Of a stretch of DNA of 64,000 bases, positions 15,527 through 64,000 are shown one piece after another. Below the pieces are notes generated by a model. The model saw only the letters and a list, made by a program, of their open reading frames with translations. It had not been told where the DNA came from and did not search any database. Where the stretch lies: the NCBI GenBank assembly GCA_002269645.1, contig NIVC01001887.1, positions 62,001-126,000 on the forward strand, in the 5' to 3' direction. Source of the DNA: Macrostomum lignano. Its lineage: Eukaryota. The translations under genes were made by a program, and so were the position numbers. Numbering within the stretch: the stretch's first letter is position 1; the number at the start of each line of letters is the position of its first letter.

Positions 15527-27233
<11,707 letters not shown>

Positions 27234-49378: not shown

Positions 49379-52300
49379 TCTTACTTCCTCAACTCCCCAA
49401 CCCCACAGAGCATTCTGTCCAGGTCTCCCGCCGTAACGCTTGGCGGGCTGCTAGAGTCCCGCTTCCCCGATTTCTGGTCGCTGATGCCGGAGCCGGAGCG
49501 GCAGCTGCTGCGGCAGTCCAGCTGCGACGCCTTCTACACGGTGCTGGTGCCCAAGCAGCTGGACTCGCTGAGGGCGCTCAGTGGCGAGCAGCGATCGGCG
49601 GCTCTCCGAGAGCACATCGTGAAGGGGCTCTGGTGCACCGCCGGGATGATCGACCGGGAGACGCAGCCGGTGGCCACCGTATCCACGGAGAGCGTCAGGT
49701 TTGCCTGCTCGGCGAGCTCCGCCCGCCAGGTGCTGTTCGGTCCGAACTTCAGCCGGAGAGCCACGGTGTCCAGCGCTGCCGGAGAGTTCGACATCATGGC
49801 GGTCAACGGCGTCCTGCAAGTCGTGGATGCGCCAATCCTGCCCAAGGACGGTGAGGGAAAGGAGAGCAGAGGGAGGAGGAAAAGGAGAGCACAGAGGGAA
49901 AAGAGAGAGAGGACAGAGTGAAAATAGAGAGGGCCGAGGGAAAGGAGAGAGGGCCGAGGGAAAGGAGAGAGGGCAGAGGGAAAGGAGAGAGGGCAGAGGG
50001 AAAGGAGAGAGGGCAGAGGGAAAGGAGAGAGGGCAGAGGGAAAGGAGAGAGGGCAGAGGGAAAGGAGAGAGGGCAGAGGGAAAGGAGAGAGGGCAGAGGG
50101 AAATGGAGAGAGGGGGCAGAGGGAAATGGAGAGAGGGGGCAGAGGGAAGGAACAAGAGGCAGGCAAGCAGGCAGCGCAGCAATACTTTCTAAAAAGTTTT
50201 GTTATCAATGACCCACCCGCCACCAGCGCTGTCTCTGCGGACGGCGCTGCAGCTTGAGGAGGCCGAGCCACCCGGCGAAGACTCTGTGGCCTCCGAGCCG
50301 GAGAACCTGTCGGCAGGCCTGGTGCGGGAGTGCTTCCTGAACTTCCAGGAGGGCGACGGCTACATCGTGCTGCTGCCTACGGACGAGGCCTTCCGAAGTG
50401 AGTTTCCGCCTCCTTTGGTGCTTGAAGATGCCGACTGGCTGACTCAACTCAATCTCTCCCCCCCATTCCCAGAATTTTTCACACAGCGCAACATCCCGGA
50501 GGCTGTCGGATTTCACGACAGCGCCGAAATTCGATGCGCTCTGCTGCGTCACCACGTCCTGGCGGCCGGGCGCGGCCTCACGAGCCTCGGCCGGGCGACC
50601 CACGTGCAGCGGGTTTACCGCAGCCTGGCCGGGGACCTCGTGGCCGACTACCTGTTCGTTAAGAACGGCGTACCGAAGGTGCGAAGGGGCTAAGACCCTG
50701 GATCTGGCACTCCCTGACATCTGGCACTCCCTGACATCTGGCACTCCCTGACATCTGGCACTCCCTGACATCTGGCACTCCCTGACATCTGGCACTCCCT
50801 GACATCTGGCACTCCCTGACATCTGGCACTCCCTGACATCTGGCACTCCCTGACATCTGGCACTCCCTGACATCTGGCACTCCCTGACATCTGGCACTCC
50901 CTGACATCTGGCACTCCCTGACATCTGGCACTCCCTGACATCTGGCACTCCCTGACATCTGGCACTCCCTGACATCTGGCACTCCCTGACATATGACAAT
51001 CACTGACATTCCCTTCCTGACATCTCCCACTTAACATTTCGCTCATAAAGCCCTAAGAAGTCTCTCACACCGCACCGCAGGCATTCTTCATGAACGCTGA
51101 AGTCATTCACGACACCGAAGGTCATGCATTCGAAAACGGCCACCTCTACCATGTCAGCGAGGTGCTGGTGCCGCCCGGATCTCCCGTGTGGGGCCGAATG
51201 GTGGATGACATGTACACAGAGCAGTGAGTCAGGCAGCGTCACCGATTGGAATTAATCTAGTTAATGTTGCCAGGATAAAATCTTCTGATTGTGGCGCTAA
51301 AGACTCTGTTCTTAGGATTATCCAGGTAGATTGTGGGATTAGCGAATCTGTTGCCAGGATTATCCAGGTAGATTGTGGGATTAGCGAGTCTGTTTGCAGG
51401 ATTATCCAGGTAGATTGTGGGATTAACGAATCTGTTGCCAGGATTATCCAGGTAGATTGTGGGATTAGCGAGTCTGTTGCCAGGATTATCCAGGTAGATT
51501 GTGAGATTAGTGAATCTGTTGCCAGGATTATCCAGGTAGATTGTGCGATTAACGAATATGTTGCCAGGATTATCCAGGTAGATTGTGGGATTAACGAATA
51601 TGTTGCCAGGATTATCCAGGTAGATTGTGGGATTAGCGAGTCTGTTGCCAGGATTATCCAGGTAGATCATATGTTCTCGATATAATGCAGTCAAAGCACC
51701 CCAAATTAATTCTACTCCAGGAAGCGCGTCATCAACAGGTTCCAGTCGCTGGGGCGGCGCCATGGCAACCGCTTGCTGACCCTGTTCCTGCCCACCAACG
51801 GCTATCACGCGCTGATCGTGAGTTATCGTTGCTACTATGAGTAGGACATACATGTAGCACTCTAAAAATGCAACTTAGAACTACTGCTGCAGAACTTGGA
51901 CACCCTGCGGAGCCACACGGCTGATTCGGTGTTTTACCTGGCCTACCTGACCGAGGACGGCCAGTCGGTGGACCTGACCAATCTGGCTGGCGGGCGGATC
52001 ACCGTGTCCAGGGAGGCCGGACAGTACTTTGCCGCCTGCGGCGAAACGGCGATGCGGTGGAAGGTATTGCAGATTATGGGATATGGGATATGGAATATGG
52101 GATATACGAGTAGGATATGGGATATGGGACACAGGATATGGGATATAGGATATGGGATATGGGATATGGGATATGGGATATACGAGTAGGATATGGGATA
52201 TGGGATACAGGATATGGGATATAGGATATGGGATATGGGATACAGGATATGGGATATGGGATATGGGATATGGGATATGGGATATAGGATATGGGATATG

Positions 52301-52782
52301 GGATACATGATATGGGATATGGGATATGGGATATGGGATATGGGATATAGGATATGGGATATGGGATACATGATATGGGATATGGGATATGGGATATGGG
52401 ATATGGGATATGGGATATGGGATATAGGATATGGGATATAGGATATGGGATATGGGATACATGATATGGGATATGGGATATGGGATATGGGATATGGGAT
52501 ATAGGATATGGGATATGGGATATGGGATATGGGATATGGGATATGGGATATGGGATATGGGATATGGGATATGGGATATAGGATATGGGATATGGGATAT
52601 GGGATATGGGATATGCAATATGGGAAATGGGAAATGCATTGTGGGCTGGCAAATTCCTTCCTCCCCCATCGCAGGTGCCGCTGCGCCACTGCGGAGTCCG
52701 GCTTGCCGCTGGCATCGTGTGCAGCGTCGAGGAGCCGCTGAAGGCCCACGGCAGCGCAGAACTCGGCGGCGCCCTGTCATGA
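44716..52782 (+). CDS. Periostin/TGFBI-like secreted fasciclin protein (signal peptide, EMI-like Cys module, about 4 FAS1 domains), about 703 aa
   Basis: Phase-consistent exons 44716-44846, 46028-46159, 46825-47082, 49008-49182, 49265-49342, 49409-49850, 50227-50397, 50473-50678, 51081-51223, 51721-51817, 51893-52063, 52675-52782. Motifs DCCPGF, TLLALVDEAF, ANHEAGNAVVHFI, DIMAVNGVLQVVD, VLLPTDEAF, NGHLYHVSEVL, TLFLPTN. Confidence 0.85.
44890..45932. repeat. 19-20 bp minisatellite (AGGCCCAGGAGGAGAAGTG) in fasciclin gene intron 1
   Basis: Direct periodicity. Confidence 0.96.
46285..46785. repeat. 20-bp minisatellite (GACTGTTAGATATCCCAGGA) in fasciclin gene intron 2
   Basis: Direct periodicity. 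Confidence 0.93.
47170..47571. repeat. 32-bp minisatellite (CACAGACACATGGGGCCAACCATATTGCACCT)
   Basis: Direct periodicity, about 12 copies. Confidence 0.95.
48170..48780. repeat. 21-bp (10+11) TGAGCAA-based minisatellite
   Basis: Core TTGAGCAATCCTGAGCAAGAT. Confidence 0.92.
49915..50150. repeat. 20-bp polypurine repeat (GGGCAGAGGGAAAGGAGAGA)
   Basis: Direct periodicity. Confidence 0.9.
50702..50990. repeat. 17-bp perfect minisatellite (CTGGCACTCCCTGACAT)
   Basis: About 17 copies starting about 24 nt after a donor. Confidence 0.96.
51260..51666. repeat. 42-bp minisatellite (GTTGCCAGGATTATCCAGGTAGATTGTGGGATTAGCGAATCT)
   Basis: About 9 copies. Confidence 0.93.
52074..52635. repeat. (GGGATAT)n heptamer satellite in the last fasciclin intron
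   Basis: 7-bp periodicity. Confidence 0.96.
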
Positions 52783-53598: not shown

Positions 53599-54530
53599 AG
53601 CGAAAAAGTACAGCGGCACAAGACTGTTTCCGAGGATAAGTTGCGGCTGAAAATTGACGGAAACTTTCCCGAGTCGACGCGGAGGAAGGCCGAGTGGATG
53701 GTGAAGATCTTCATGGAATGGCATGAGGAAAAGAAGAAAGTATGGGCTACCGGCGGAGGACCCTCGTTGATGGTGCTGAAGGAACTGAAGGAGATGTCAA
53801 GGGCTGATTTCAACTATCTTCTAACGTTCTTTGTACTGGAAGTTAGGAAGAAAGATGGTGAGAGATACGCTCGTATGGAGCCTCTTCATTGAAGGATCTT
53901 GTTTTAATGTTACAATTCCATGTTCAAGTTGTTCTCAAGGAATAATCAAGGAGGCCTAAAATCGCTGCGAAAGGATCCAAAATTTGTTCGGGCTTTTCAT
54001 AGCCCGGACCATCAACGTTGCATCGTCTGTGTGTGCAAGGAATTTGTTTCCCATCGTCCTACTGCAGTTGTTGCACAGCCTTGTTCCTTGCAGTCAACAG
54101 GAACTGGAAGGCGGAGACTCAGGGCGAGTGGTATACGAAGGGTCCCATTGGACGCCACACACTTTCAACAGTCGTTTCGGATCTGATGAAGGAAGTCGCT
54201 CCAAATGACACGGCTCGATCCACCAACCAAAGCTTGAGAAAGACATGCGCCACCCGGCTGCAGGAATCCGGCATGCAGCTCGCCGATATATGCCGTGTAA
54301 CGGGGCATAGCAGCACCGCCGTGGAGAAGTACATTGGAGTGTCCGTAAACCAACAGAGAATGATCAGCGAGACGCTCAGGATGACGTCTGGAGTAGCGAC
54401 AACAACACCTGCGTCTACAGCTCCGCCTGATGCCGTCTCAACGTCTGCCGTTGACACTGCGACCCCCAAAAAGAAGATGCGACTAGAAATATGCGGTAAG
54501 ACTAACAGAATCAGCATCCACTTAGATTGA
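53599..54530 (+). mobile_element. Decayed Crypton-like tyrosine-recombinase element (DUF3504-type), internally deleted and frameshifted
   Basis: Fragments NYLLTFFVLEVRKKDGERY; SRNNQGGL..RK.PK.V....RCIV; WYTKGPIGRHTL; TNQSLRKTCATRL..SG...ICRVTGHSS..VEKY are spread over three frames. Confidence 0.8.
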
Positions 54531-54769: not shown

Positions 54770-54960
54770 AGCAGACTCTGATCCGAGCACCTGTCGGCCA
54801 GTGCAGAGACTCTCTGAAGACCCGAGCACCTGTCGGCTAGCGCAGAGACTCTCTGAAGACCCGAGCACCTGTCGGCCAGCGCAGAGACTCTCTGAAGACC
54901 CGAGCACCTGTCGGCCAGCGCAGAGACTCTCTGAAGACCCGAGCACCTGTCGGCCAGCGC
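54770..54960. repeat. 39-bp repeat (about 5 copies) just upstream of the TRP ATG
   Basis: Unit CAGAGACTCTCTGAAGACCCGAGCACCTGTCGGCCAGCG. Confidence 0.92.
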
Positions 54961-54980
54961 ATCACACCGAAAGCTCCAGC

Positions 54981-57900
54981 ATGGCGGAGAGGCGCCGCAA
55001 ACAGGGCCGGCCGGGCGGCTCCCGGATGGCCGTCATCACTGGTCACAGTCCGGTGCTGAATGCCTACTACGACGGCGATCTGGACAAGCTGCGTGAGCTG
55101 CTGGTGGCGGACGAAGACAATCTGATCAACCCCGGCAACACCGGCCAGCCTCTGTGCTTCCTGGCCGCGCGAGAGAACCGCAAAGGGGTCCTGCGCGTCA
55201 TCCACGGCGTCAGCGGCGACCTGCGCTACCTTGGCTACACGGACAACGAGGGCGAAAACTGCCTGTTCACCGCCATCCGCTCCAGCAGCCTGCGGGCCGC
55301 CAAGTTCCTCCTGAGCGTCGGCTTCGACCCGAAACAACAAAACCGACACGGCCAGACGCCGCTGCACATCGCCTGCATCGTCGACGACCCGCACTTCGTG
55401 CACCTCCTGCTCCATTCTGGCGCGGATCCGAACGTCTGCGACTCCAGTGGCAATTTGCCGCTGCACCGCGCCTGCCAGGAGAACCAGCCGCGAATGGTGC
55501 GGATGCTGCTGCTGCACACCCGCGACATCAACGCCAAGGCCGCGGCGAACCGGACGGCGATGCACTTTGCTGCCCTGTCGCAGTCGCTGGACCTGCTGAC
55601 CCTCCTCCTTGCCGCCGGGGCCAGCTGCCACGTCTTCGATTCGGACCGCCGCTCGCCCATGGACATTGTGCTGTCCCTGGGCAACCTCATCATCATGACG
55701 GGCTTGTCTGAGTACTTCACGCACCGCGTGAAGGGCACCATAGACGATCTAGAGACGCTGCAGCACTCTCCAGAATTCGGCGAAGTGCTCACTACGTTGC
55801 AGGCGGTGGACGACGACCTGGAGAACCCGGTTCAGCTGGTGTGCGACTTCCACGGCCTGCAGCCGGTGGAGCTGACGGAAGACATTCAGGCGGGCATCCT
55901 GCAGAAGATCCGCGATCGCGAGCGCCTCGACTTTATGCAGTTTCGCAGTCTGCTCCGTCACGTGATCAGCGGCGACTTGTCCACCCAGCTGGTAGAAAGA
56001 GGCGTCCTGCCAGAGTTCGCCGAGATGGTCGCCAAGCAGGTGCTGTACCGCGAAGACGTCGAAATGCTGCGCCTGCTGATGTTTGGCACCACGCTGTGGC
56101 GGCACCTTTCGGCCGAGCTGGAGAAGCATATCATGACTCTGTACAACGACTGCGGCGAGCTGGGCTCCACCGGCATGCAGAACATGCGCTGCCGGTTCTT
56201 CGGCGACCGAAAGACTGGCCAGGTTTCGGAGGCGCTGATGCTGAAGTTCTTTGCCAAGTTTCTCAACATGTCCAACATGCTGCCGTGCGAGCATGAGCAC
56301 AGCAGCTTCATGCGCAACCCCATCAAGACCCTGCCAGTGTGGTCCGTGCTCACCGGCCGCTTCCTACTCACGGAGGAGCTGCTGAAGGCCGAGCAATTCG
56401 ACATGCTGCCCCTGGGCCTGTTCTGCATCCGGCTGCTGCGCCGGCTGGCCAAGAGCCGCCAGATGCCGCGGCCTTCGAAGAGCCTCATGAACAGCGTTGC
56501 TGACAAGATCGAGAGCGTCTGCATGAAGCTGCTGCGGGCTGTGGACAAACTTGACGTAAGCGAGAAGAAGGCCGTGTCCATAAACTACATCCGGCAAAAG
56601 ATGCCGGCGTACTCCAACCTCACCTGCATGTCGCTGGCTGCCGGAGGCGAGTGCGAGGCCTTCATGGTGATGAACACCGTGCAGACCGCTGTGGAGCGCG
56701 AGTGGTACCAGAAGCTGTTCCATCTCTCCCATTGGCGCCGGGAGATCATCATCCTGCTGGGGATCGTGCCGTACAACCCCATTCTCTACTGGGCGCTGCA
56801 AATCTCGGCCAGCAAGGACGCGGGCGACACCGTGCTGCACTCGCACGAAGAGGCTCCGGTCCCAGTGGCGCAAGACACGTCCGACTCGAGCGGGCACGGG
56901 CACGAAGCCGGGCAGAAGGAGAAGACGATGCCTACCATACAGGAAGAAGGCGCCGCTGAGGATCCCGATCATATCGACGAGCATCACGACTTGGTTCACG
57001 AGGATGCCATGATTGAGCATCACGATGAGCACCACGGTGACAGCCTGCCTCACGACGAGAGAGATGGAGATCAGGAGCACCTGATTGAGCCAGAAGGTCA
57101 CGGCCACGGTCACGGGCACGAAGAGGCTAAGAGTCAAAGTAGCGGTCACGGTCATGGTCACGGTCACGGTCACGGTCACGGTCACGGTCACGCGCATGAC
57201 AAGCCAGAGGCTGCGCCGAGGTCACGGGTGGTGCAGGCAATCATAAACTACGGGTCCACCTGCACGGAGTTCTACCTGACGCCTTGTGTTCGATTTCACT
57301 ACCACATCATCTCGCACTTGGCCTTCATCGTCATGTTCTCCTACGTGATGATTGTGCACTTCAGCTACCGACTGCACGTTGTCGAGACCATCGTGTACCT
57401 GTTTGTTCTCGGCTTCCTGCTCGAGGAGCTGCACGAGATGAACGTTGCCAGACAGAAGGGCACCATGAAGAGCTACTTCCGGGACGGCTGGAACATGATT
57501 GACAACTTCGGCATCGCGACCTGCCTGCTGGGCTTCTGCATGCGGTTGGTCCGCCTGCCCCTGGCGAAGCACACCGACATCCAGCATATTTCCTTCGGCG
57601 ACGACTACTTCTGGTGGACCCGATTCGTGCTCATAATATCCTGCCTGGTGTTCTGGCTGCGCCTGCTGTACGTGTCCACCGTGATGGTGACGCTCGGTCC
57701 CAAGCTGAAGATGATCTCCGTGATGATCACACGCGACCTCGTGCCGTTTCTCATCATGCTGGCCATCATGATGTTCGGCTTCGGGCTCGTCATCCACGGC
57801 CTGCTGTTTCCCAACGGGTTCGCCATGGGCAATCCGCACAAGAGGTCCGGGCTGCGGATCTTCGAGAGCACCTTCCGCATCACCTTCTACGCCATGGTTG

Positions 57901-58457
57901 GCGACTACAGCATGGACATCATCACCGGCAACGACTGCGAGAAGGACGCCCGCTGCCCGCACCCGGTGGGCAAGGTGGTCGTGCCCAACATCATTATGAC
58001 GGTCTACATCATCATCGTGACCATCCTGTTGCTGAACCTTATCGTGGCCTCCTTCTCCAAGACTGTTGACGAGATTCAAAAGAAGTCCTTCGCCATGTGG
58101 CAGTTCGAGCGCTACGACCTGCTCGAGGAGTTCCGCGTCCGGTCGCCGGTGCCGCCGCCCTTCAACATCATCGGCGAGCTGCTGCGCGGCCTGGCCGCCC
58201 TGGTCACCATGGTGCGCAGGCGCAGCGGCGCCGCCTCCTTCAGCAAGACGAAGTTCAACAAGCACCGGGTGATCAAGTTCCTCACTCTGCAGGCCTTCGC
58301 CCTGCGCGGCCAGCGCAAGCAGCTGGTGGGCGAGCTGGAAATCGAGGACCCGGACAAGCTGCTGCCAGAGATCGGGCGGCAGCTCAAGCGGGCCGAGCAG
58401 CAGCTGCAGTTCCTGCAGAAGATCTCGGGCGAAGAGGAAGCCATCGATGATGATTAG
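54981..58457 (+). CDS. TRP cation channel with N-terminal ankyrin repeats and a TRPM-like pre-S1/S1-S6/TRP-box body; single exon, about 1158 aa
   Basis: About 6 ankyrin repeats (GENCLFTA, GQTPLHIAC, GNLPLHRAC, NRTAMHFAA). TRPM-like motifs YSNLTCMSLA, FYLTPCVRF, YFRDGWNMID, LGPKLKMI, LLNLIVASFS..V..IQ, WQFERY, SPVPPPFNII. ATG at 54981 chosen over the GTG at 54801, which lies in the repeat. Confidence 0.9.
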   Translation: MAERRRKQGRPGGSRMAVITGHSPVLNAYYDGDLDKLRELLVADEDNLINPGNTGQPLCFLAARENRKGVLRVIHGVSGDLRYLGYTDNEGENCLFTAIRSSSLRAAKFLLSVGFDPKQQNRHGQTPLHIACIVDDPHFVHLLLHSGADPNVCDSSGNLPLHRACQENQPRMVRMLLLHTRDINAKAAANRTAMHFAALSQSLDLLTLLLAAGASCHVFDSDRRSPMDIVLSLGNLIIMTGLSEYFTHRVKGTIDDLETLQHSPEFGEVLTTLQAVDDDLENPVQLVCDFHGLQPVELTEDIQAGILQKIRDRERLDFMQFRSLLRHVISGDLSTQLVERGVLPEFAEMVAKQVLYREDVEMLRLLMFGTTLWRHLSAELEKHIMTLYNDCGELGSTGMQNMRCRFFGDRKTGQVSEALMLKFFAKFLNMSNMLPCEHEHSSFMRNPIKTLPVWSVLTGRFLLTEELLKAEQFDMLPLGLFCIRLLRRLAKSRQMPRPSKSLMNSVADKIESVCMKLLRAVDKLDVSEKKAVSINYIRQKMPAYSNLTCMSLAAGGECEAFMVMNTVQTAVEREWYQKLFHLSHWRREIIILLGIVPYNPILYWALQISASKDAGDTVLHSHEEAPVPVAQDTSDSSGHGHEAGQKEKTMPTIQEEGAAEDPDHIDEHHDLVHEDAMIEHHDEHHGDSLPHDERDGDQEHLIEPEGHGHGHGHEEAKSQSSGHGHGHGHGHGHGHGHAHDKPEAAPRSRVVQAIINYGSTCTEFYLTPCVRFHYHIISHLAFIVMFSYVMIVHFSYRLHVVETIVYLFVLGFLLEELHEMNVARQKGTMKSYFRDGWNMIDNFGIATCLLGFCMRLVRLPLAKHTDIQHISFGDDYFWWTRFVLIISCLVFWLRLLYVSTVMVTLGPKLKMISVMITRDLVPFLIMLAIMMFGFGLVIHGLLFPNGFAMGNPHKRSGLRIFESTFRITFYAMVGDYSMDIITGNDCEKDARCPHPVGKVVVPNIIMTVYIIIVTILLLNLIVASFSKTVDEIQKKSFAMWQFERYDLLEEFRVRSPVPPPFNIIGELLRGLAALVTMVRRRSGAASFSKTKFNKHRVIKFLTLQAFALRGQRKQLVGELEIEDPDKLLPEIGRQLKRAEQQLQFLQKISGEEEAIDDD

Positions 58458-60124: not shown

Positions 60125-61761
60125 ATGCCAAAAAGCAAGACGAGCGTATCGACCCGTCAGCTAACGCTGACATCCCAATCATTGTGAGTACAGTTTTCTT
60201 TCTATCTGTCTTGAACTACTCATATATAACAAAATTTCTGGCTTTTAAATTCTAATATTTACTCTCCTACTAGTCTCCTAGTCCTATCTATGAATACCTT
60301 AAACCATTCTATCTCTTTGACTGTCTGTTTTGGATGAATCGCCTGCGTATAAAAAGGTTTATTTTAAAAAAATACCTATTGTAAAGGAGAAAACTATTTT
60401 TGACAATGAAGTTCTATTAGCTTTTGTATTTTAGATTATTATTAAGTTTACTTTACTGTAAGACGCGATATGTCATATGATATAAGCCACATGATGTCAC
60501 ATAATTTCCTTAAGTAGAATTTCTAAAATACTATGACACTATGAAGTTTATAGTTTTTCTTTTTCTTTCGATCCAACAAGATACAACAGTTCCGAAATAC
60601 AGGTTATGGAATAGTATAGTACTAATCAAATAAGTTTTTAAAGCCAAGTTAAAAGCAATTTATATAAGTTAATTTTGAGCATTCAGCATAAAAATATATA
60701 GATATAAATATATACAGATATGCATATATATTAATAAAATATATAGAGTGTTTTTGCATTCAAAATGATCAAATGGTCAAAATATTCGAAATATGATATT
60801 TTTGCTAAAAAATACCCTTCATACTCAGGGGCTCCCTCGCCGCCGAGGCGCACGATGACGACTGCAGTTCGAACTCGTCCGACACCTGCACGGAGGTGGA
60901 CGCCGACTACGAGAATCTGATGTCCCGCATCCGCCAGCAGAACGAGGAGATCCGGCAGCTTCAATCGGAGAACAAGCAGCTGGCGGAGGAGTTGGACCAG
61001 GAGCGCAGCCTGGGCTCCAAGCAGCTGCAGGAACTGGAGGCCGCCTCCAAGCTGGGTCAGTGGCGGATGAGGGGGGCTGAGGACCTCTGAACCCCCAATA
61101 GACATACAATGTTGGTTGTTTGAATGGGGGGGGGGTAACTTTAAAGTGCTACGCGTCCTTTCTCTACCAAGTGAAATCAGTTTTTCAATCCAGCAGCTGT
61201 GAAATCAAAGTCAATTCATTTTTTCCATTGGTCCCGACCTTCAATCGCAGACTGTCGGAAGACTTCAAGCGGTCAGACTAACACTTACTAATCACCTGCC
61301 CCGGTCTCGTAAGTGAAATTCTGCTTGCACTAACCAATAACAATGCTGCTTTTTTATTCTTACGATGCACACACACCGTAATGAACAGTCACTCAGAACT
61401 TTTTAAATACTATTTCTTATAATGCATCGCAGCAGAGATTTCGGCAGCGACTTTCTGCACATTTGCTTTTGCTCACTTTCCCATTGCAGCTGAGCGGCAG
61501 ATCCAGGAGCTGTCGGCCGAGCTGGTCCGCTCCAGGGAGGCTGGCAAGCGGGCGCAGCACGGCTATGAGACCCGCGCCATCCGCATGCACGAGGAGACGC
61601 TGCGCGACCCGTTTGAAGAGCGGCGTCGGCTGGACATACGGCTGCAGCAGCTCGAGCTGGACGCCGACCGGATGAACTCCGACCTGCGCAGCTCGGCCGA
61701 GGAGCGAACAAAGCAGCGGGAGGTCATCAGGCAGGCTGAGGCCGACCGGGACGCTGCGCAG
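60125..61761 (+). CDS. Unidentified coiled-coil protein, 5' exons; continues 3' beyond the last recognised exon
   Basis: Exons 60125-60183 (MPKSKTSVSTRQLTLTSQS, GTGAGT donor), 60829-61055, 61490-61761 (GTGAGC donor), phases 2/1/0 consistent. Heptad-rich E/Q/R/L sequence. Confidence 0.75.
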
Positions 61762-61771
61762 GTGAGCTGGC

Positions 61772-63405
61772 CTGTCTTAATGCGTGTCACTGCCTGTCTT
61801 CTGTGTGTCACTGCCTGTCTAATGTGTGTCACTGCCTGTCTTCTGTGCGTCACTGTCTGTCTTCTGTGTGTCACTGCCTGTCTTCTGTCTGTCACTGCCT
61901 GTCTAATGTGTGTCACTGCCTGTCTTCTGTGTGTCACTGCCTGTCTTCTGTGTGTCACTGCCTGTCTTCTGTGTGTCACTGCCTGTCTTCTGTGCGTCAC
62001 TGTCTGTCTAATATGTGTCACTGCCTGTCTTCTGTGTGTCACTGTCTGTCTTCTGTGCGTCACTGTCTGTCTTCTGTGTGTCACTGCCTGTCTTCTGTGT
62101 GTCACTGCCTGTCTAATGTGTGTCACTGCCTGTCTTCTGTGTGTCACTGCCTGTCTTCTGTGTGTCACTGCCTGTCTTCTGTGTGTCACTGCCTGTCTTC
62201 TGTGCGTCACTGTCTGTCTTCTGTGTGTCACTGCCTGTCTTCTGTGTGTCACTGCCTGTCTTCTGTGCGTCACTGTCTGTCTTCTGTGTGTCACTGTCTG
62301 TCTTCTGTGCGTCACTGTCTGTCTTCTGTGTGTCACTGCCTGTCTTCTGTGTGTCACTGCCTGTCTAATGTGTGTCACTGCCTGTCTTCTGTGTGTCACT
62401 GCCTGTCTTCTGTGTGTCACTGCCTGTCTTCTGTGTGTCACTGCCTGTCTTCTGTGTGTCACTGTCTGTCTTCTGTGTGTCACTTCCAGTCTAATGTGTG
62501 TCACTGCCTGTCTTCTGTGTGTCACTGCCTGTCTTCTGTGCGTCACTGCCTGTTTTCTGTGTGTCACTGCCTGTCTAATGTGTGTCACTGTCTGTCTTCT
62601 GTGTGTAATTGCCTGTCTTCTGTGTGTCACTGTCTGTCTTCTGTGTGTCACTTCCAGTCTAATGTGTGTCACTGCCTGTCTTCTGTGTGTCACTGCCTGT
62701 CTTCTGTGCGTCACTGTCTGTCTAATATGTGTCACTGCCTGTCTAATGTGTGTCACTGCCTGTCTTCTGTGTGTCACTGCCTGTCTTCTGTGCGTCACTG
62801 CCTGTTTTCTGTGTGTCACTGCCTGTCTAATGTGTGTCACTGTCTGTCTTCTGTGTGTCACTTCCAGTCTAATGTGTGTCACTGCCTGTCTTCTGTGTGT
62901 CACTGCCTGTCTTCTGTGCGTCACTGTCTGTCTAATATGTGTCACTGCCTGTCTAATGTGTGTCACTGCCTGTCTTCTGTGTGTCACTGCCTGTCTTCTG
63001 TGCGTCACTGCCTGTTTTCTGTGTGTCACTGCCTGTCTAATGTGTGTCACTGCCTGTCTTCTGTGCGTCACTGCCTGTTTTCTGTGTGTCACTGCCTGTC
63101 TAATGTGTGTCACTGTCTGTCTTCTGTGTGTAATTGCCTGTCTTCTGTGTATCACTGTCTGTCTTCTGTGTGTCACTTCCAGTCTAATGTGTGTCACTGC
63201 CTGTCTTCTGTGCGTCACTGTCTGTCTAATATGTGTCACTGCCTGTCTTCTGTGTGTCACTGTCTGTCTTCTGTGTGTCACTGCCTGTCTTCTGTGTGTC
63301 ACTGTCTGTCTTCTGTGTGTCACTTCCTGTCTAATGTGTGTCACTGCCTGTCTTCTGTGTGTCACTGCCTGTCTTCTGTGTGTCACTGCCTGTTTTCTTT
63401 GTGTG
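61772..63405. repeat. 21-bp minisatellite (TGTGTGTCACTGCCTGTCTTC), about 78 copies, starting right after a donor
   Basis: Direct periodicity. Confidence 0.97.
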
Positions 63406-63784
63406 CTGTCACTGTCGCATTTCACCGTTGCCATGGGGACGCCCAGCAATAGCCGCAGTCCCCACATGTGTGCAGTTAATCCATCACCTCTCAGGCTGAG
63501 CCTCTCTGCCCAAGATTAAGCTTTGAGAATGTTTACCAAAAATAGCCACCGGAATGTGGGAGCGGGCAGGCGATGAATCAAATGCTCAGAAATGAAGTCT
63601 TCTCCCGGCTAAAGCAGATTTCCCAGCTAGATTGGAAAGGAGATTCCAATAAAAATATTTAAATGGCCGCCTTGAGTTTTTTCCAAGATTTTAAAGAAGT
63701 CAACTTCATTTGCTTTTGAGAATTGGCTGTCCTTTTGCAATTTCTGACTGCCTTCCTGGATGTTCCAGGACTGCACTGGCTGTC

Positions 63785-64000
63785 CTGGGTATCTCAGACT
63801 CTGTCCTGTGTATCTCAGACTCTACCCTGGGTATCTCAGGCTCTACCCTGGGTATCTCAGGCTCTATCCTGGGTATCTCAGACTCTATCCTGGGTATCTC
63901 AGACTCTATCCTGGGTATCTCAGGCTCTATCCTGGGTATCTCAGGCTCTACCCTGGGTATCTCAGGCTCTATCCTGGGTATCTCAGACTCTATCCTGGGT
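63785..64000. repeat. 21-bp minisatellite (CTCTATCCTGGGTATCTCAGG), runs off the window
   Basis: Direct periodicity. Confidence 0.93.

What the first reader, a model, noticed from the sequence alone, without database searches (positions are those of the whole stretch)
54981..58457. Chimeric TRP channel: ankyrin repeats on a TRPM-like body
Seen: about 6 ankyrin repeats (55040-55690), then segments resembling TRPM MHR3/4 (VLYREDVEMLRLL..LYND; LPVWSVL; YSNLTCMSLA), a TRPM-like TM region and the TRP box WQFERY..PVPPPF. No SLOG/MHR1-2 region and no C-terminal NUDT9-H or kinase domain. Established: ankyrins typify TRPA/C/N/V, while canonical TRPMs have MHR1-4 and no ankyrins. Inference: domain shuffling replaced MHR1/2 with ankyrins, giving a possibly undescribed sensory channel type.
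Basis: partly seen in the sequence, partly recalled or inferred. Interest (0 to 1): 0.75.

Follow-up and report, generated by a model that had tools for sequence, protein, structure and literature searches.

The report
Flatworm ankyrin-bearing TRPM-like channel gene
This is an intact gene from the free-living flatworm Macrostomum lignano for a TRPM-like ion channel that carries ankyrin repeats where TRPM channels normally have a SLOG domain; the layout is real, but it was already described in parasitic flatworms as the target of the drug meclonazepam (TRPM_MCLZ), so it is a new member of a known kind.

Summary
Window 54981-58457 (+) is one uninterrupted 1158-codon ORF. It encodes 6-7 ankyrin repeats, a TRPM MHR3/4-like helical domain, a TRPM-type S1-S6 channel with the TRP helix (WQFERY...PVPPPF), and a C-terminal long helix. 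There is no SLOG/MHR1-2, NUDT9-H or kinase domain, and no SLOG-coding sequence anywhere in the 64 kb.

The window is Macrostomum lignano (GCA_002269645.1, NIVC01001887.1), where the same 1158-aa single-exon product is already called.

"Possibly undescribed" does not hold. This architecture was published for Schistosoma mansoni TRPM_MCLZ (Smp_333650), the meclonazepam-activated Ca2+-permeable channel. That literature calls the group a "TRPM-like" clade with N-terminal ankyrin repeats and no MHR1/2-SLOG (PMC10788528, PMC11731825, PMC12861061).

The window protein falls in a clade (NJ bootstrap 84%) with trematode, cestode and monogenean TRPM_MCLZ orthologues. It shares their S1 His...His pair, S4 Arg and TRP-helix Tyr.

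The likely new points are modest:
- The family exists in a free-living flatworm.
- It is expanded there, with at least 11 paralogue groups.
- This copy has a unique His/acidic-rich loop.
- Some flatworm TRPMs carry both ankyrin repeats and SLOG.

Verdict: a new member of a known kind, of low to moderate interest.

The parts
54981..58457 (+). Complete intronless coding sequence (1158 codons plus stop) of an ankyrin-bearing, SLOG-less TRPM-like channel subunit of Macrostomum lignano.
   Evidence: ORF listing and translation. The identical 1158-aa product is called as a single 3477-nt gene on NCBI contig NIVC01001887.1 of GCA_002269645.1.
55050..55727 (+). Ankyrin-repeat domain, residues 24-249: an N-terminal capping helix pair plus six regular 33-residue repeats.
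   Evidence: Pfam Ank_2 E 2.6e-29 and four other ANK models. PDB hits to ankyrin-1/2, DARPins and the NOMPC ANK array. AF2 helix pairs with pLDDT ~80-94.
55728..56018 (+). Helical linker, residues 250-346, between the ankyrin repeats and the MHR3-like region. It has no detectable homologue outside the family.
   Evidence: AF2 helices 257-355, with a low-confidence loop at 281-292. The family profile gives no PDB match for its first ~160-170 positions. The hhalign match starts at residue 347.
56019..56792 (+). TRPM homology region 3/4-like domain, residues 347-604.
   Evidence: hhalign of the family N-terminus against canonical SLOG-TRPM N-termini aligns residues 347-597 to the columns directly after SLOG, probability 99.2, E 7e-20. 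Pfam PF25508 at 437-562. The family profile hits only TRPM1-8 in PDB, E to 7e-12. All top 50 Foldseek hits of the isolated domain model (pLDDT 83.4) are TRPMs.
56814..57224 (+). Disordered His/Gly/acidic-rich loop, residues 612-748 (20% His). It includes (HG)3 and (HG)8 runs and lies between MHR4 and pre-S1.
   Evidence: pLDDT ~28 over residues 615-747. A 6-bp tandem repeat lies at 57143-57192. The corresponding linker in 17 homologues is variable in length (24-135 aa) and not His-rich, except for 10% His in P0006.
57225..58052 (+). Pre-S1 helix and six transmembrane helices S1-S6, residues 749-1024. The pore helix is at 957-973 and the putative filter V973-G974-D975 follows it. Conserved sites are the VSLD Ca2+-site residues E816, E819, N838 and D841, and the ligand-pocket residues H775, H779, R894 and Y897.
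   Evidence: Pfam Ion_trans. phmmer against PDB gives nvTRPM2 E 5e-32, and all 60 listed hits are TRPMs. AF2 helices. Site-by-site comparison with 131 other TM regions.
58065..58139 (+). TRP helix, residues 1029-1053, with TRP box WQFERY (1040-1045, Y1045). The TRPM-type PVPPPF motif follows at 1056-1061.
   Evidence: Alignment to nvTRPM2 and hTRPM2 'WKFQRYDLVQEYHSRP..PP'. AF2 helix 1029-1053.
58350..58451 (+). C-terminal long helix, residues 1124-1157. It is a candidate tetramerisation coiled coil like that of TRPMs. No enzyme domain follows it.
   Evidence: AF2 helix 1124-1157. No Pfam hit C-terminal to Ion_trans. The coiled-coil role is an inference.
54783..54961 (+). 39-bp tandem repeat (4.6 copies, 97% matches) ending 20 nt upstream of the start codon. 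It is probably 5' UTR or promoter-proximal and is not shown to be coding.
   Evidence: Tandem Repeats Finder and direct reading of the sequence. There is no ATG upstream in the open frame.

Best explanation
The ORF encodes a subunit of a tetrameric, non-selective, probably Ca2+-permeable cation channel. It belongs to the flatworm 'TRPM-like' clade whose characterised member is Schistosoma mansoni TRPM_MCLZ.

Shown:
- The TRPM MHR3/4 domain, S1-S6, the TRP helix and a C-terminal helix are all retained.
- The N-terminal SLOG (MHR1/2) nucleotide-binding module of canonical TRPMs is absent. A 6-7 repeat ankyrin array plus a ~100-residue helical linker sits in its place.
- There is no NUDT9-H or kinase domain.

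Inferred working model:
- Four subunits assemble through the transmembrane domain and the C-terminal helix.
- The ankyrin array and MHR3/4 form the cytosolic ring.
- Gating is controlled from the S1-S4 voltage-sensor-like cavity. That cavity keeps the TRPM Ca2+-coordinating residues (E816, E819, N838, D841).
- It also keeps the residues that line the meclonazepam pocket in the schistosome channel: H775 and H779 in S1, R894 in S4 and Y1045 in the TRP helix.
- An unknown small ligand and/or intracellular Ca2+ would open a pore whose filter (V-G-D) carries an acidic side chain.
- Without SLOG and NUDT9-H, the channel should not be gated by ADP-ribose.
- The S4 position that sets meclonazepam sensitivity (H946 in S. 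mansoni) is Tyr here, as in the insensitive Fasciola orthologue. This paralogue is therefore predicted not to respond to meclonazepam.

Evolutionary placement: the gene is one of a Macrostomum-specific expansion that is co-orthologous to the single TRPM_MCLZ gene of parasitic flatworms.
For: Anatomy:
- Pfam domains.
- PDB sequence matches.
- AF2 models and Foldseek searches.
- hhalign of residues 347-597 to the post-SLOG part of canonical TRPMs, probability 99.2.
- No SLOG coding sequence anywhere in the window.

It is a family, not a one-off:
- The 14 best clusters from an exhaustive search of 1.84 billion representatives (E 1e-206 to 1e-54) were scanned with Pfam. All but one short sequence of unknown source (P0011, 801 aa) have ANK repeats and none has LSDAT.
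- PF25508 reached the 0.001 reporting threshold in 9 of them and Ion_trans in 12.
- They come from M. lignano, Opisthorchis, Dicrocoelium and Schistocephalus, the last including the 1413-aa UniProt entry A0A0V0J4K6.
- Fasciolopsis and the monogenean Protopolystoma join the clade.

Clade membership:
- An NJ tree of 132 TM regions (296 columns, 200 bootstraps) gives a clade of 26 with 84% support. No SLOG-bearing protein falls inside it.
- The Neodermata subclade has 100% support. The M. lignano expansion has 100%. The window protein pairs with Mlig012389 at 94%.

Link to published TRPM_MCLZ:
- Opisthorchis gene models carry two channel domains, matching the reported exon 3a/3b duplication (PMC12861061).
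- The S1-His to S4-Arg spacing is 112 residues, as in Sm H831 to R943.
- The S4+3 residue is H in Opisthorchis 3b, Y in the Dicrocoelium and Fasciolopsis sequences and F in the cestode, matching the published H/Y/F variation at this site.
- Dicrocoelium is 1378 aa against Sm 1380 aa (PMC11731825).
- The S1 H...H pair is present in the window protein, whereas most other TRPMs have N...Y.

Function of the characterised member: Sm.TRPM_MCLZ was cloned from cDNA. When expressed in HEK293 cells it gave meclonazepam-evoked Ca2+ entry and currents, which a pore mutant abolished (PMC10788528).
Against: - Sm.TRPM_MCLZ itself (A0A5K4FCC0) could not be retrieved. The link to it rests on orthologues identified from published features, not on a direct alignment.
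- The tree is neighbour-joining with a simple distance correction and has no TRPS, TRPC, TRPN or TRPA outgroups. Support for the whole clade is 84%, not decisive.
- The sister relation to flatworm SLOG-TRPMs has only 12% support.
- No expression data for this locus were available.
- Channel activity, ion selectivity, Ca2+ dependence and ligand sensitivity are all inferred from conserved residues.
- The pore-loop alignment to the parasite orthologues is gappy. They read F-E/D-S/G where this protein reads V-G-D, so the pores may differ.
Confidence: 0.85

Rival explanations
1. A genuinely new TRP subfamily. On this reading, the ankyrin-bearing flatworm proteins diverged before the TRPM/TRPS split, or derive from TRPS. 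They would then deserve family rank rather than a place as a derived TRPM branch, and the ankyrin repeats would be ancestral rather than newly acquired.
For: The clade is separated from all SLOG-bearing TRPMs in the NJ tree, and its attachment point is unsupported at 12%. MHR3 of canonical TRPMs contains cryptic ankyrin repeats (PMC13143021, citing Burroughs 2015), and weak hhalign sub-hits link the window's ANK repeats to that region. Himmel et al. 2020 did not sample Platyhelminthes. PMC12861061 itself says only 'TRPM-like'.
Against: The best matches everywhere are TRPM, and the TRPM-specific Pfam model PF25508 passes its cutoff. The TRP helix plus PPPF motif and the S2/S3 Ca2+ site are TRPM-typical. 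All named members are flatworms, which fits a lineage-specific derivation. The published flatworm TRP tree puts the clade next to TRPMs (PMC12861061).
Confidence: 0.08
2. A gene-prediction or assembly artefact, or a dead retrocopy. On this reading the ankyrin part and the channel part are not one functional protein at this locus.
For: The gene has no intron, whereas the closest paralogue Mlig012389 has one ~100-nt intron at residue ~621 and schistosome TRPM_MCLZ has three exons (PMC11731825). A recombinase-like remnant and repeats lie just upstream. No transcript evidence was available here.
Against: The ORF runs 3474 nt without a stop through both parts in the raw DNA. Key functional residues are intact. 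The AF2 model is confident for all folded domains. The same fused architecture recurs in most of the 14 closest clusters, across several species, and in a functionally expressed schistosome cDNA (PMC10788528).
Confidence: 0.05
3. A TRPN/TRPA/TRPC-type channel, ankyrin-bearing by descent, whose resemblance to TRPM is superficial.
For: The top whole-model Foldseek hit is Drosophila NOMPC, E 1.3e-15. NOMPC also scores in phmmer through its ANK array.
Against: The NOMPC match has a lower TM-score (0.27) than the TRPM matches (0.31-0.37) and comes from the ANK array. With the ANK region removed, every PDB sequence hit shown and every top-50 structural hit is a TRPM. The MHR3/4 region has no counterpart in TRPN, TRPA or TRPC.
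Confidence: 0.02

Closest known systems
Schistosoma mansoni TRPM_MCLZ (Smp_333650; UniProt A0A5K4FCC0) and its orthologues in trematodes, cestodes and monogeneans (the 'TRPM-like' clade)
   Same: N-terminal ankyrin repeats, no MHR1/2-SLOG, an MHR3/4-like region, TRPM-type S1-S6 and TRP helix, and a short C-terminus without an enzyme domain. The S1 His...His pair, S4 Arg and TRP-helix Tyr of the drug pocket are shared. Gene structure is compact. The two group in one clade in the NJ tree (PMC10788528, PMC11731825, PMC12861061).
   Different: - Only ~22-23% full-length identity and ~30% in the TM region to the parasite orthologues.
- It comes from a free-living flatworm, where the family has at least 11 paralogue groups rather than one gene.
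- It is intronless.
- The S2 pocket Tyr is Phe, and the S4 H946 position is Tyr.
- The pore loop reads V-G-D.
- It has a unique 137-residue His/acidic-rich loop.
- Its ANK repeats are strongly canonical (Ank_2 E 2.6e-29), rather than the 'ankyrin-like' modules described for the schistosome channel.
Canonical TRPM channels (e.g. Nematostella TRPM2, PDB 6co7; human TRPM2, TRPM4 and TRPM8)
   Same: The MHR3/4 fold, S1-S6, the S2/S3 Ca2+-site residues, TRP box W-x-F-x-R-Y followed by PPPF, and a C-terminal helix.
   Different: It lacks the SLOG/MHR1-2 domain that defines the melastatin N-terminus and lacks NUDT9-H. It has a true ankyrin array, which TRPMs are described as lacking (PMC7306681).
Flatworm ANK + SLOG TRPMs (M. 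lignano Mlig003066, 1781 aa; Clonorchis sinensis KAG5447154; Opisthorchis viverrini XP_009171463)
   Same: An N-terminal ankyrin stretch on a TRPM body, in the same phylum.
   Different: They keep a full LSDAT_euk SLOG domain and a complete PF25508 domain. They fall in a separate, well-supported clade of flatworm TRPMs (96%). Their ANK hits are weak, at 32.9 bits.
TRPN/NOMPC and TRPA1
   Same: An N-terminal ankyrin array attached to a six-TM TRP channel. NOMPC is the top whole-model Foldseek hit.
   Different: They have no MHR3/4 region. At sequence level the window's transmembrane and TRP domains match TRPM channels: all 60 listed PDB hits are TRPMs. Their repeat number is far higher (29 in NOMPC; established knowledge).

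Membership tests
TRPM (melastatin) family, classical definition | N-terminal MHR1/2 = SLOG (LSDAT_euk) domain | tested here: not met
   No LSDAT hit in Pfam. A SLOG profile built from 68 TRPMs finds nothing in the protein or in any frame of the 64-kb window.
TRPM (melastatin) family, classical definition | MHR3/MHR4 helical domains preceding S1 | tested here: met
   PF25508 scores 30.3 bits against a cutoff of 27. hhalign probability 99.2 for residues 347-597. PDB profile hits are only TRPM1-8. The Foldseek top 50 are all TRPMs.
TRPM (melastatin) family, classical definition | TRPM-type S1-S6 with the S2/S3 Ca2+-site residues and a TRP helix followed by a proline-rich motif | tested here: met
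   nvTRPM2 E 5e-32, and all 60 listed hits are TRPMs. E816/E819/N838/D841 correspond to the canonical E/Q/N/D. WQFERY...PVPPPF is present.
TRPM (melastatin) family, classical definition | Absence of canonical ankyrin repeats | tested here: not met
   Ank_2 E 2.6e-29, with 6-7 repeats. TRPM and TRPS are described as ankyrin-free (PMC7306681).
TRPM (melastatin) family, classical definition | Phylogenetic placement inside TRPM relative to TRPS, TRPC and TRPN | tested here: inconclusive
   No outgroup sequences could be obtained. The NJ attachment to flatworm TRPMs has 12% support. The published flatworm TRP tree puts the clade next to TRPMs (PMC12861061).
Flatworm TRPM_MCLZ-type 'TRPM-like' clade | Architecture: N-terminal ankyrin repeats, no SLOG, TRPM channel body, no C-terminal enzyme domain | tested here: met
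   compared with the descriptions in PMC11731825 section 3.1 and PMC12861061.
Flatworm TRPM_MCLZ-type 'TRPM-like' clade | Groups with TRPM_MCLZ orthologues in a phylogeny of the channel domain | tested here: met
   A clade of 26 with 84% bootstrap contains the window protein together with Opisthorchis, Dicrocoelium, Fasciolopsis, Schistocephalus and Protopolystoma sequences. Sm.TRPM_MCLZ itself was not in the data set. The orthologues were recognised by published features.
Flatworm TRPM_MCLZ-type 'TRPM-like' clade | Conserved pocket residues H827, H831 (S1), R943 (S4) and Y1117 (TRP helix), in Sm numbering | tested here: met
   The window protein has H775, H779, R894 and Y1045. Y864 (S2) is Phe, E868 is kept as E816, and H946 is Tyr897.
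Flatworm TRPM_MCLZ-type 'TRPM-like' clade | Forms a Ca2+-permeable cation channel activated by (S)-meclonazepam | not testable with these tools
   This needs heterologous expression. Tyr at the H946 position suggests low or no sensitivity, by analogy with Fasciola Y994 (PMC12861061). That is an inference.
Flatworm TRPM_MCLZ-type 'TRPM-like' clade | One-to-one orthology with Smp_333650 | tested here: not met
   The window gene lies in a Macrostomum-specific expansion (10 representatives, bootstrap 100%). That expansion is separate from the Neodermata subclade (100%), so the gene is at most a co-orthologue.

The most novel reading that the evidence does not exclude
The TRPM_MCLZ-type channel would not be a parasite speciality. 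It would be an old flatworm invention that radiated in free-living Macrostomum into a dozen or so ankyrin-bearing TRPM-like channels with diversified ligand pockets, pores and linkers, this copy having a His-rich, possibly metal- or pH-sensitive loop.

It could have arisen stepwise from a TRPM that first gained N-terminal ankyrin repeats and then lost SLOG. On this reading the ANK+SLOG form still present in Macrostomum, Clonorchis and Opisthorchis would be the intermediate.

That would give a transgenic, free-living model for finding the natural stimuli of an anthelmintic drug target.
Probability: 0.35. Interest if true: 0.5.

Novelty: new member of a known kind. Interest (0 to 1): 0.3.

Why it matters
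TRPM_MCLZ is one of two flatworm TRPM-type channels validated as anthelmintic targets. Its natural activator and physiological role are unknown, and published surveys covered parasitic species only.

This work shows that Macrostomum lignano, a free-living flatworm in which transgenesis is possible, carries a large family of the same ANK-for-SLOG architecture with the drug-pocket histidines conserved. That offers a tractable system for asking what these channels sense and what the ankyrin array does in place of the nucleotide-binding SLOG domain.

For TRP evolution, it documents that the statement 'TRPMs have no ankyrin repeats' fails across Platyhelminthes, a phylum left out of the main TRPM/TRPS phylogeny (PMC7306681). 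It does not reveal a new kind of channel.

Tried and rejected
1. The search for homologous proteins was of little use:
- With residues 250-1158 it returned nothing, because the 8000 candidates were swamped by the His/Gly low-complexity words.
- With the TM region it returned only one M. lignano fragment.
- With a family profile it returned five short proteins and missed the full-length relatives.
- The exhaustive representative search was needed instead.

It was replaced by a local six-frame hmmsearch with my own SLOG profile.

3. I looked for the Sm.TRPM_MCLZ sequence, or the flatworm TRP sequence set, in the supplements of PMC12861061 and PMC10788528. Neither is held. No direct alignment to Smp_333650 was therefore possible, and no TRPA/TRPC/TRPN/TRPS outgroups were available.

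4. The hypothesis that the His-rich segment is an unspliced in-frame intron was considered and set aside:
- The paralogue Mlig012389 has its only intron at the same place.
- However, the segment is GC-rich like the rest of the CDS.
- All 17 homologues in the full-length alignment have a 24-135 aa disordered linker there.
- nvTRPM2 also has ~95 residues between its MHR4 match and S1.
- Transcript data would settle it.

5. The reading 'TRPN-like because NOMPC is the top Foldseek hit' was rejected after removing the ANK region.

6. A literature search for TRPM_MCLZ together with free-living flatworms listed no paper that uses the name among the 15 shown. Neither primary TRPM_MCLZ paper mentions free-living flatworms or planarians.

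Full report
**What is in the sequence**

A single open reading frame runs from 54801 to 58457 on the + strand. Its first ATG is at 54981, giving a 1158-residue protein. The coding island is GC-rich (0.58-0.60) and is flanked by AT-rich DNA.

An exact-sequence look-up places the window in Macrostomum lignano, assembly GCA_002269645.1, contig NIVC01001887.1. There a gene with exactly this 1158-aa product, 3477 nt long and therefore a single exon, is already called.

**Domain content**

Pfam gives:
- strong ankyrin hits (Ank_2 E 2.6e-29, and four more ANK models) over roughly residues 40-240;
- the TRPM-specific model PF25508 ('TRPM2-like domain') at residues 437-562 (E 6e-7, 30.3 bits against a cutoff of 27);
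- Ion_trans at residues 780-1036 (E 2.4e-13).

There is no SLOG/LSDAT, NUDIX or alpha-kinase hit.

Against PDB sequences, the ANK part matches ankyrins, DARPins and the NOMPC array. With the ANK part removed the picture is purely TRPM:
- The transmembrane region's best 60 distinct hits are all TRPM1-8 or TRPM2-like. Nematostella TRPM2 is first at E 5e-32.
- Residues 446-604 align to the MHR4/pre-S1 region of nvTRPM2 and hTRPM2.
- A profile of residues 245-615 built from 11 family members hits only TRPM channels, with E down to 7e-12.
- A local profile-profile comparison aligns residues 347-597 collinearly with the part of canonical TRPMs that starts directly after the SLOG domain and ends before S1. 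Probability is 99.2 and E is 7e-20.

**Structure**

An AlphaFold2 model made with an 18-sequence family alignment has mean pLDDT 73.5 and pTM 0.66. It shows, in order:
- an N-terminal cap plus six regular ankyrin helix pairs (residues 24-249);
- an all-helical region (250-621);
- a disordered loop (615-747);
- a pre-S1 helix, S1-S6, and a pore helix at 957-973;
- a TRP helix at 1029-1053;
- a long C-terminal helix at 1124-1157.

Foldseek of the whole model returns NOMPC first with TM-score 0.27, a match driven by the ANK array. After that it returns only TRPM structures, with TM-scores 0.31-0.37.

The isolated 245-615 domain model has pLDDT 83.4. Its top 50 hits are TRPM structures only.

**The missing SLOG is real**

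It finds SLOG in canonical flatworm TRPMs at E ~1e-100. It finds nothing in this protein or its relatives. It also finds nothing in any of the six frames of the 64-kb window, where the best E is ~9. No second channel domain is present either.

**It is a family**

An exhaustive HMMER search of 1.84 billion representative proteins, using residues 250-1158, found 1623 relatives.

The 14 best clusters (E 1e-206 to 1e-54) were scanned with Pfam. All but one short sequence of unknown source (P0011, 801 aa) have ANK repeats. PF25508 reached the 0.001 threshold in 9 of them and Ion_trans in 12. None has LSDAT.

Their sources are:
- many M. lignano loci: Mlig012389, 020550, 030565, 019746/014463/025374/032509, 022043/007691, 023207, 033956/026745, 004154, 028468 and 011463;
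- Opisthorchis viverrini and O. felineus;
- Dicrocoelium dendriticum;
- Fasciolopsis buski;
- the cestode Schistocephalus solidus, including the 1413-aa UniProt entry A0A0V0J4K6;
- the monogenean Protopolystoma xenopodis.

Every named member is a flatworm. A few members come from unnamed read-archive or metagenome assemblies.

**It is already described**

Three papers cover this architecture:
- Park et al. (PMC10788528) identified S. mansoni Smp_333650, named TRPM_MCLZ, as the channel activated by the anthelmintic benzodiazepine meclonazepam. They describe a long N-terminal domain with multiple 'ankyrin-like' repeats and functional Ca2+ entry in HEK293 cells.
- Sprague et al. (PMC11731825, section 3.1) state that it 'lacks the NH2-terminal MHR1/2 or SLOG domain' and has ankyrin-repeat-like modules instead. 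They also report 1380 residues, three exons and no enzyme domain.
- Rohr et al. (PMC12861061) call the group 'TRPM-like' because of its N-terminal ankyrin repeat domains. They catalogue 63 orthologues in trematodes, monogeneans and cestodes.

The earlier TRPM/TRPS phylogeny states that TRPM and TRPS lack ankyrin repeats, but it did not sample Platyhelminthes (PMC7306681). A 2026 survey of TRPM domain gains and losses does not mention flatworms.

**Link between the window protein and TRPM_MCLZ**

I could not obtain the Smp_333650 sequence itself. The parasite sequences I did recover match the published description in four ways:
- Opisthorchis gene models contain two complete channel domains, matching the reported exon 3a/3b duplication.
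- The distance from the second S1 histidine to the S4 arginine is 112 residues, as in Sm H831 to R943.
- The S4 residue three positions after that arginine is His in Opisthorchis 3b, Tyr in the Dicrocoelium and Fasciolopsis sequences and Phe in the cestode, matching the published H/Y/F variation.
- The Dicrocoelium protein is 1378 aa, against 1380 aa for Sm.

A neighbour-joining tree of 132 channel domains (296 columns, 200 bootstraps) gives these results:
- The parasite proteins, the window protein and all other ANK/no-SLOG proteins form one clade of 26, with 84% support.
- No SLOG-bearing protein falls inside it.
- The Neodermata subclade has 100% support.
- Ten M. lignano representatives form a lineage-specific expansion with 100% support.
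- The window protein pairs with Mlig012389 at 94%.

The window protein also keeps the S1 His...His pair (H775, H779), which PMC12861061 says is absent from the other schistosome TRPMs. It keeps R894 and the TRP-helix Y1045 as well. Most other TRPMs in my set have Asn...Tyr at the two S1 positions.

**How it probably works**

By homology, four subunits form a cation channel. The following points are inferences from conserved residues, not measurements.
- The TRPM Ca2+-site residues in S2/S3 are kept (E816, E819 in place of Gln, N838, D841).
- The drug and ligand cavity of the voltage-sensor-like domain is kept.
- The pore loop after the pore helix reads V-G-D, with an acidic residue at the position that is mostly Glu, and sometimes Asp or Gln, in the other TRPMs of my alignment.
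- I therefore expect a Ca2+-permeable, non-selective channel gated from the S1-S4 cavity by an unknown ligand and/or Ca2+.
- Without SLOG and NUDT9-H, it should not be gated by ADP-ribose.
- Tyr897 sits at the position of Sm H946, where Tyr in Fasciola goes with meclonazepam insensitivity (PMC12861061). This paralogue is therefore predicted to be insensitive.
- The ankyrin array presumably takes the place of the SLOG layer in the cytosolic ring. What it binds is unknown.

**What remains open**

- The tree has no outgroups and uses a simple method. The attachment of the clade to flatworm SLOG-TRPMs has only 12% support. Whether the clade is a derived TRPM branch or something deeper, for example related to TRPS, is not settled by my data.
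- Expression of this intronless copy is unverified. Its closest paralogue has one ~100-nt intron at the MHR4/channel junction.
- I could not check whether the architecture occurs outside flatworms beyond the 150 best representatives.

**Verdict**

It belongs to the published TRPM_MCLZ-type 'TRPM-like' clade, so it is a new member of a known kind rather than an undescribed channel type.

The modestly new points are:
- the family's presence and expansion in a free-living flatworm;
- the unique His-rich loop of this copy;
- the existence of flatworm TRPMs that carry both ANK and SLOG.

Noticed in passing
Proteins P0027 (M. lignano Mlig003066g1, 1781 aa), P0070 (Clonorchis sinensis KAG5447154.1, 1708 aa) and P0204 (Opisthorchis viverrini XP_009171463.1); not in the window: A second flatworm TRPM type combines an N-terminal ankyrin stretch (Ank_2, 32.9 bits) with a full SLOG (LSDAT_euk), a complete PF25508 domain and the channel. 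It falls in a separate, well-supported flatworm TRPM clade. It could be an intermediate on the way to the SLOG-less form, or an independent ANK gain. I did not find it described in the papers I read.
   Followed up: partly
window 56814-57224 (residues 612-748): A 137-residue disordered loop with 20% His, including (HG)3 and (HG)8 runs plus EHH/DEHH motifs. It is unique to this paralogue: the homologous linkers are 24-135 aa and not His-rich. It could bind metals or sense pH, or it could simply be a microsatellite expansion (6-bp repeat at 57143-57192).
   Followed up: partly
window 54783-54961: A 39-bp tandem repeat (4.6 copies, 97% identical) ends 20 nt before the start codon. It is in frame with the ORF but has no upstream ATG. 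Its role, whether 5' UTR, promoter element or neither, is unknown.
   Followed up: no
window 53641-54530 (+): Overlapping short ORFs lie just upstream of the channel gene. One has a weak Phage_integrase (tyrosine recombinase) match, E 1.5e-5 and 25.3 bits, below the 27.1-bit cutoff. It is possibly a decayed Crypton-like mobile element.
   Followed up: no
window 52075-52636: A long 7-bp microsatellite, (TATGGGA) x 80.6, at 87% matches.
   Followed up: no
window 25644-27233 (-): A 530-aa ORF with a Laminin N-terminal domain (E 3.2e-29). It is probably an exon of a laminin or netrin-type gene.
   Followed up: no
window 61563-63519, both strands: ORFs of more than 630 aa are open on both strands of the same stretch. 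AT skew is strong (-0.525 over 62001-64000), and there are low-complexity Pfam hits (SMBP, antifreeze beta-roll). It looks like a long simple or repetitive coding-like array rather than two genes.
   Followed up: no
L002 (NIVC01001595.1:41442-48925), paralogue Mlig012389g1: The closest paralogue has a single ~100-nt intron at residue ~621, at the MHR4/channel junction. That is the same junction where trematode TRPM_MCLZ starts its channel-encoding exon 3. The window gene has no intron there.
   Followed up: partly
Proteins P0007 and P0168 (Opisthorchis viverrini gene models, 1906 and 2059 aa): These gene models contain two complete channel domains in tandem, because alternative exons 3a and 3b were merged into one prediction. 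This is consistent with the duplication reported in PMC12861061. The S4 pocket residue is Asn in one copy and His in the other.
   Followed up: yes
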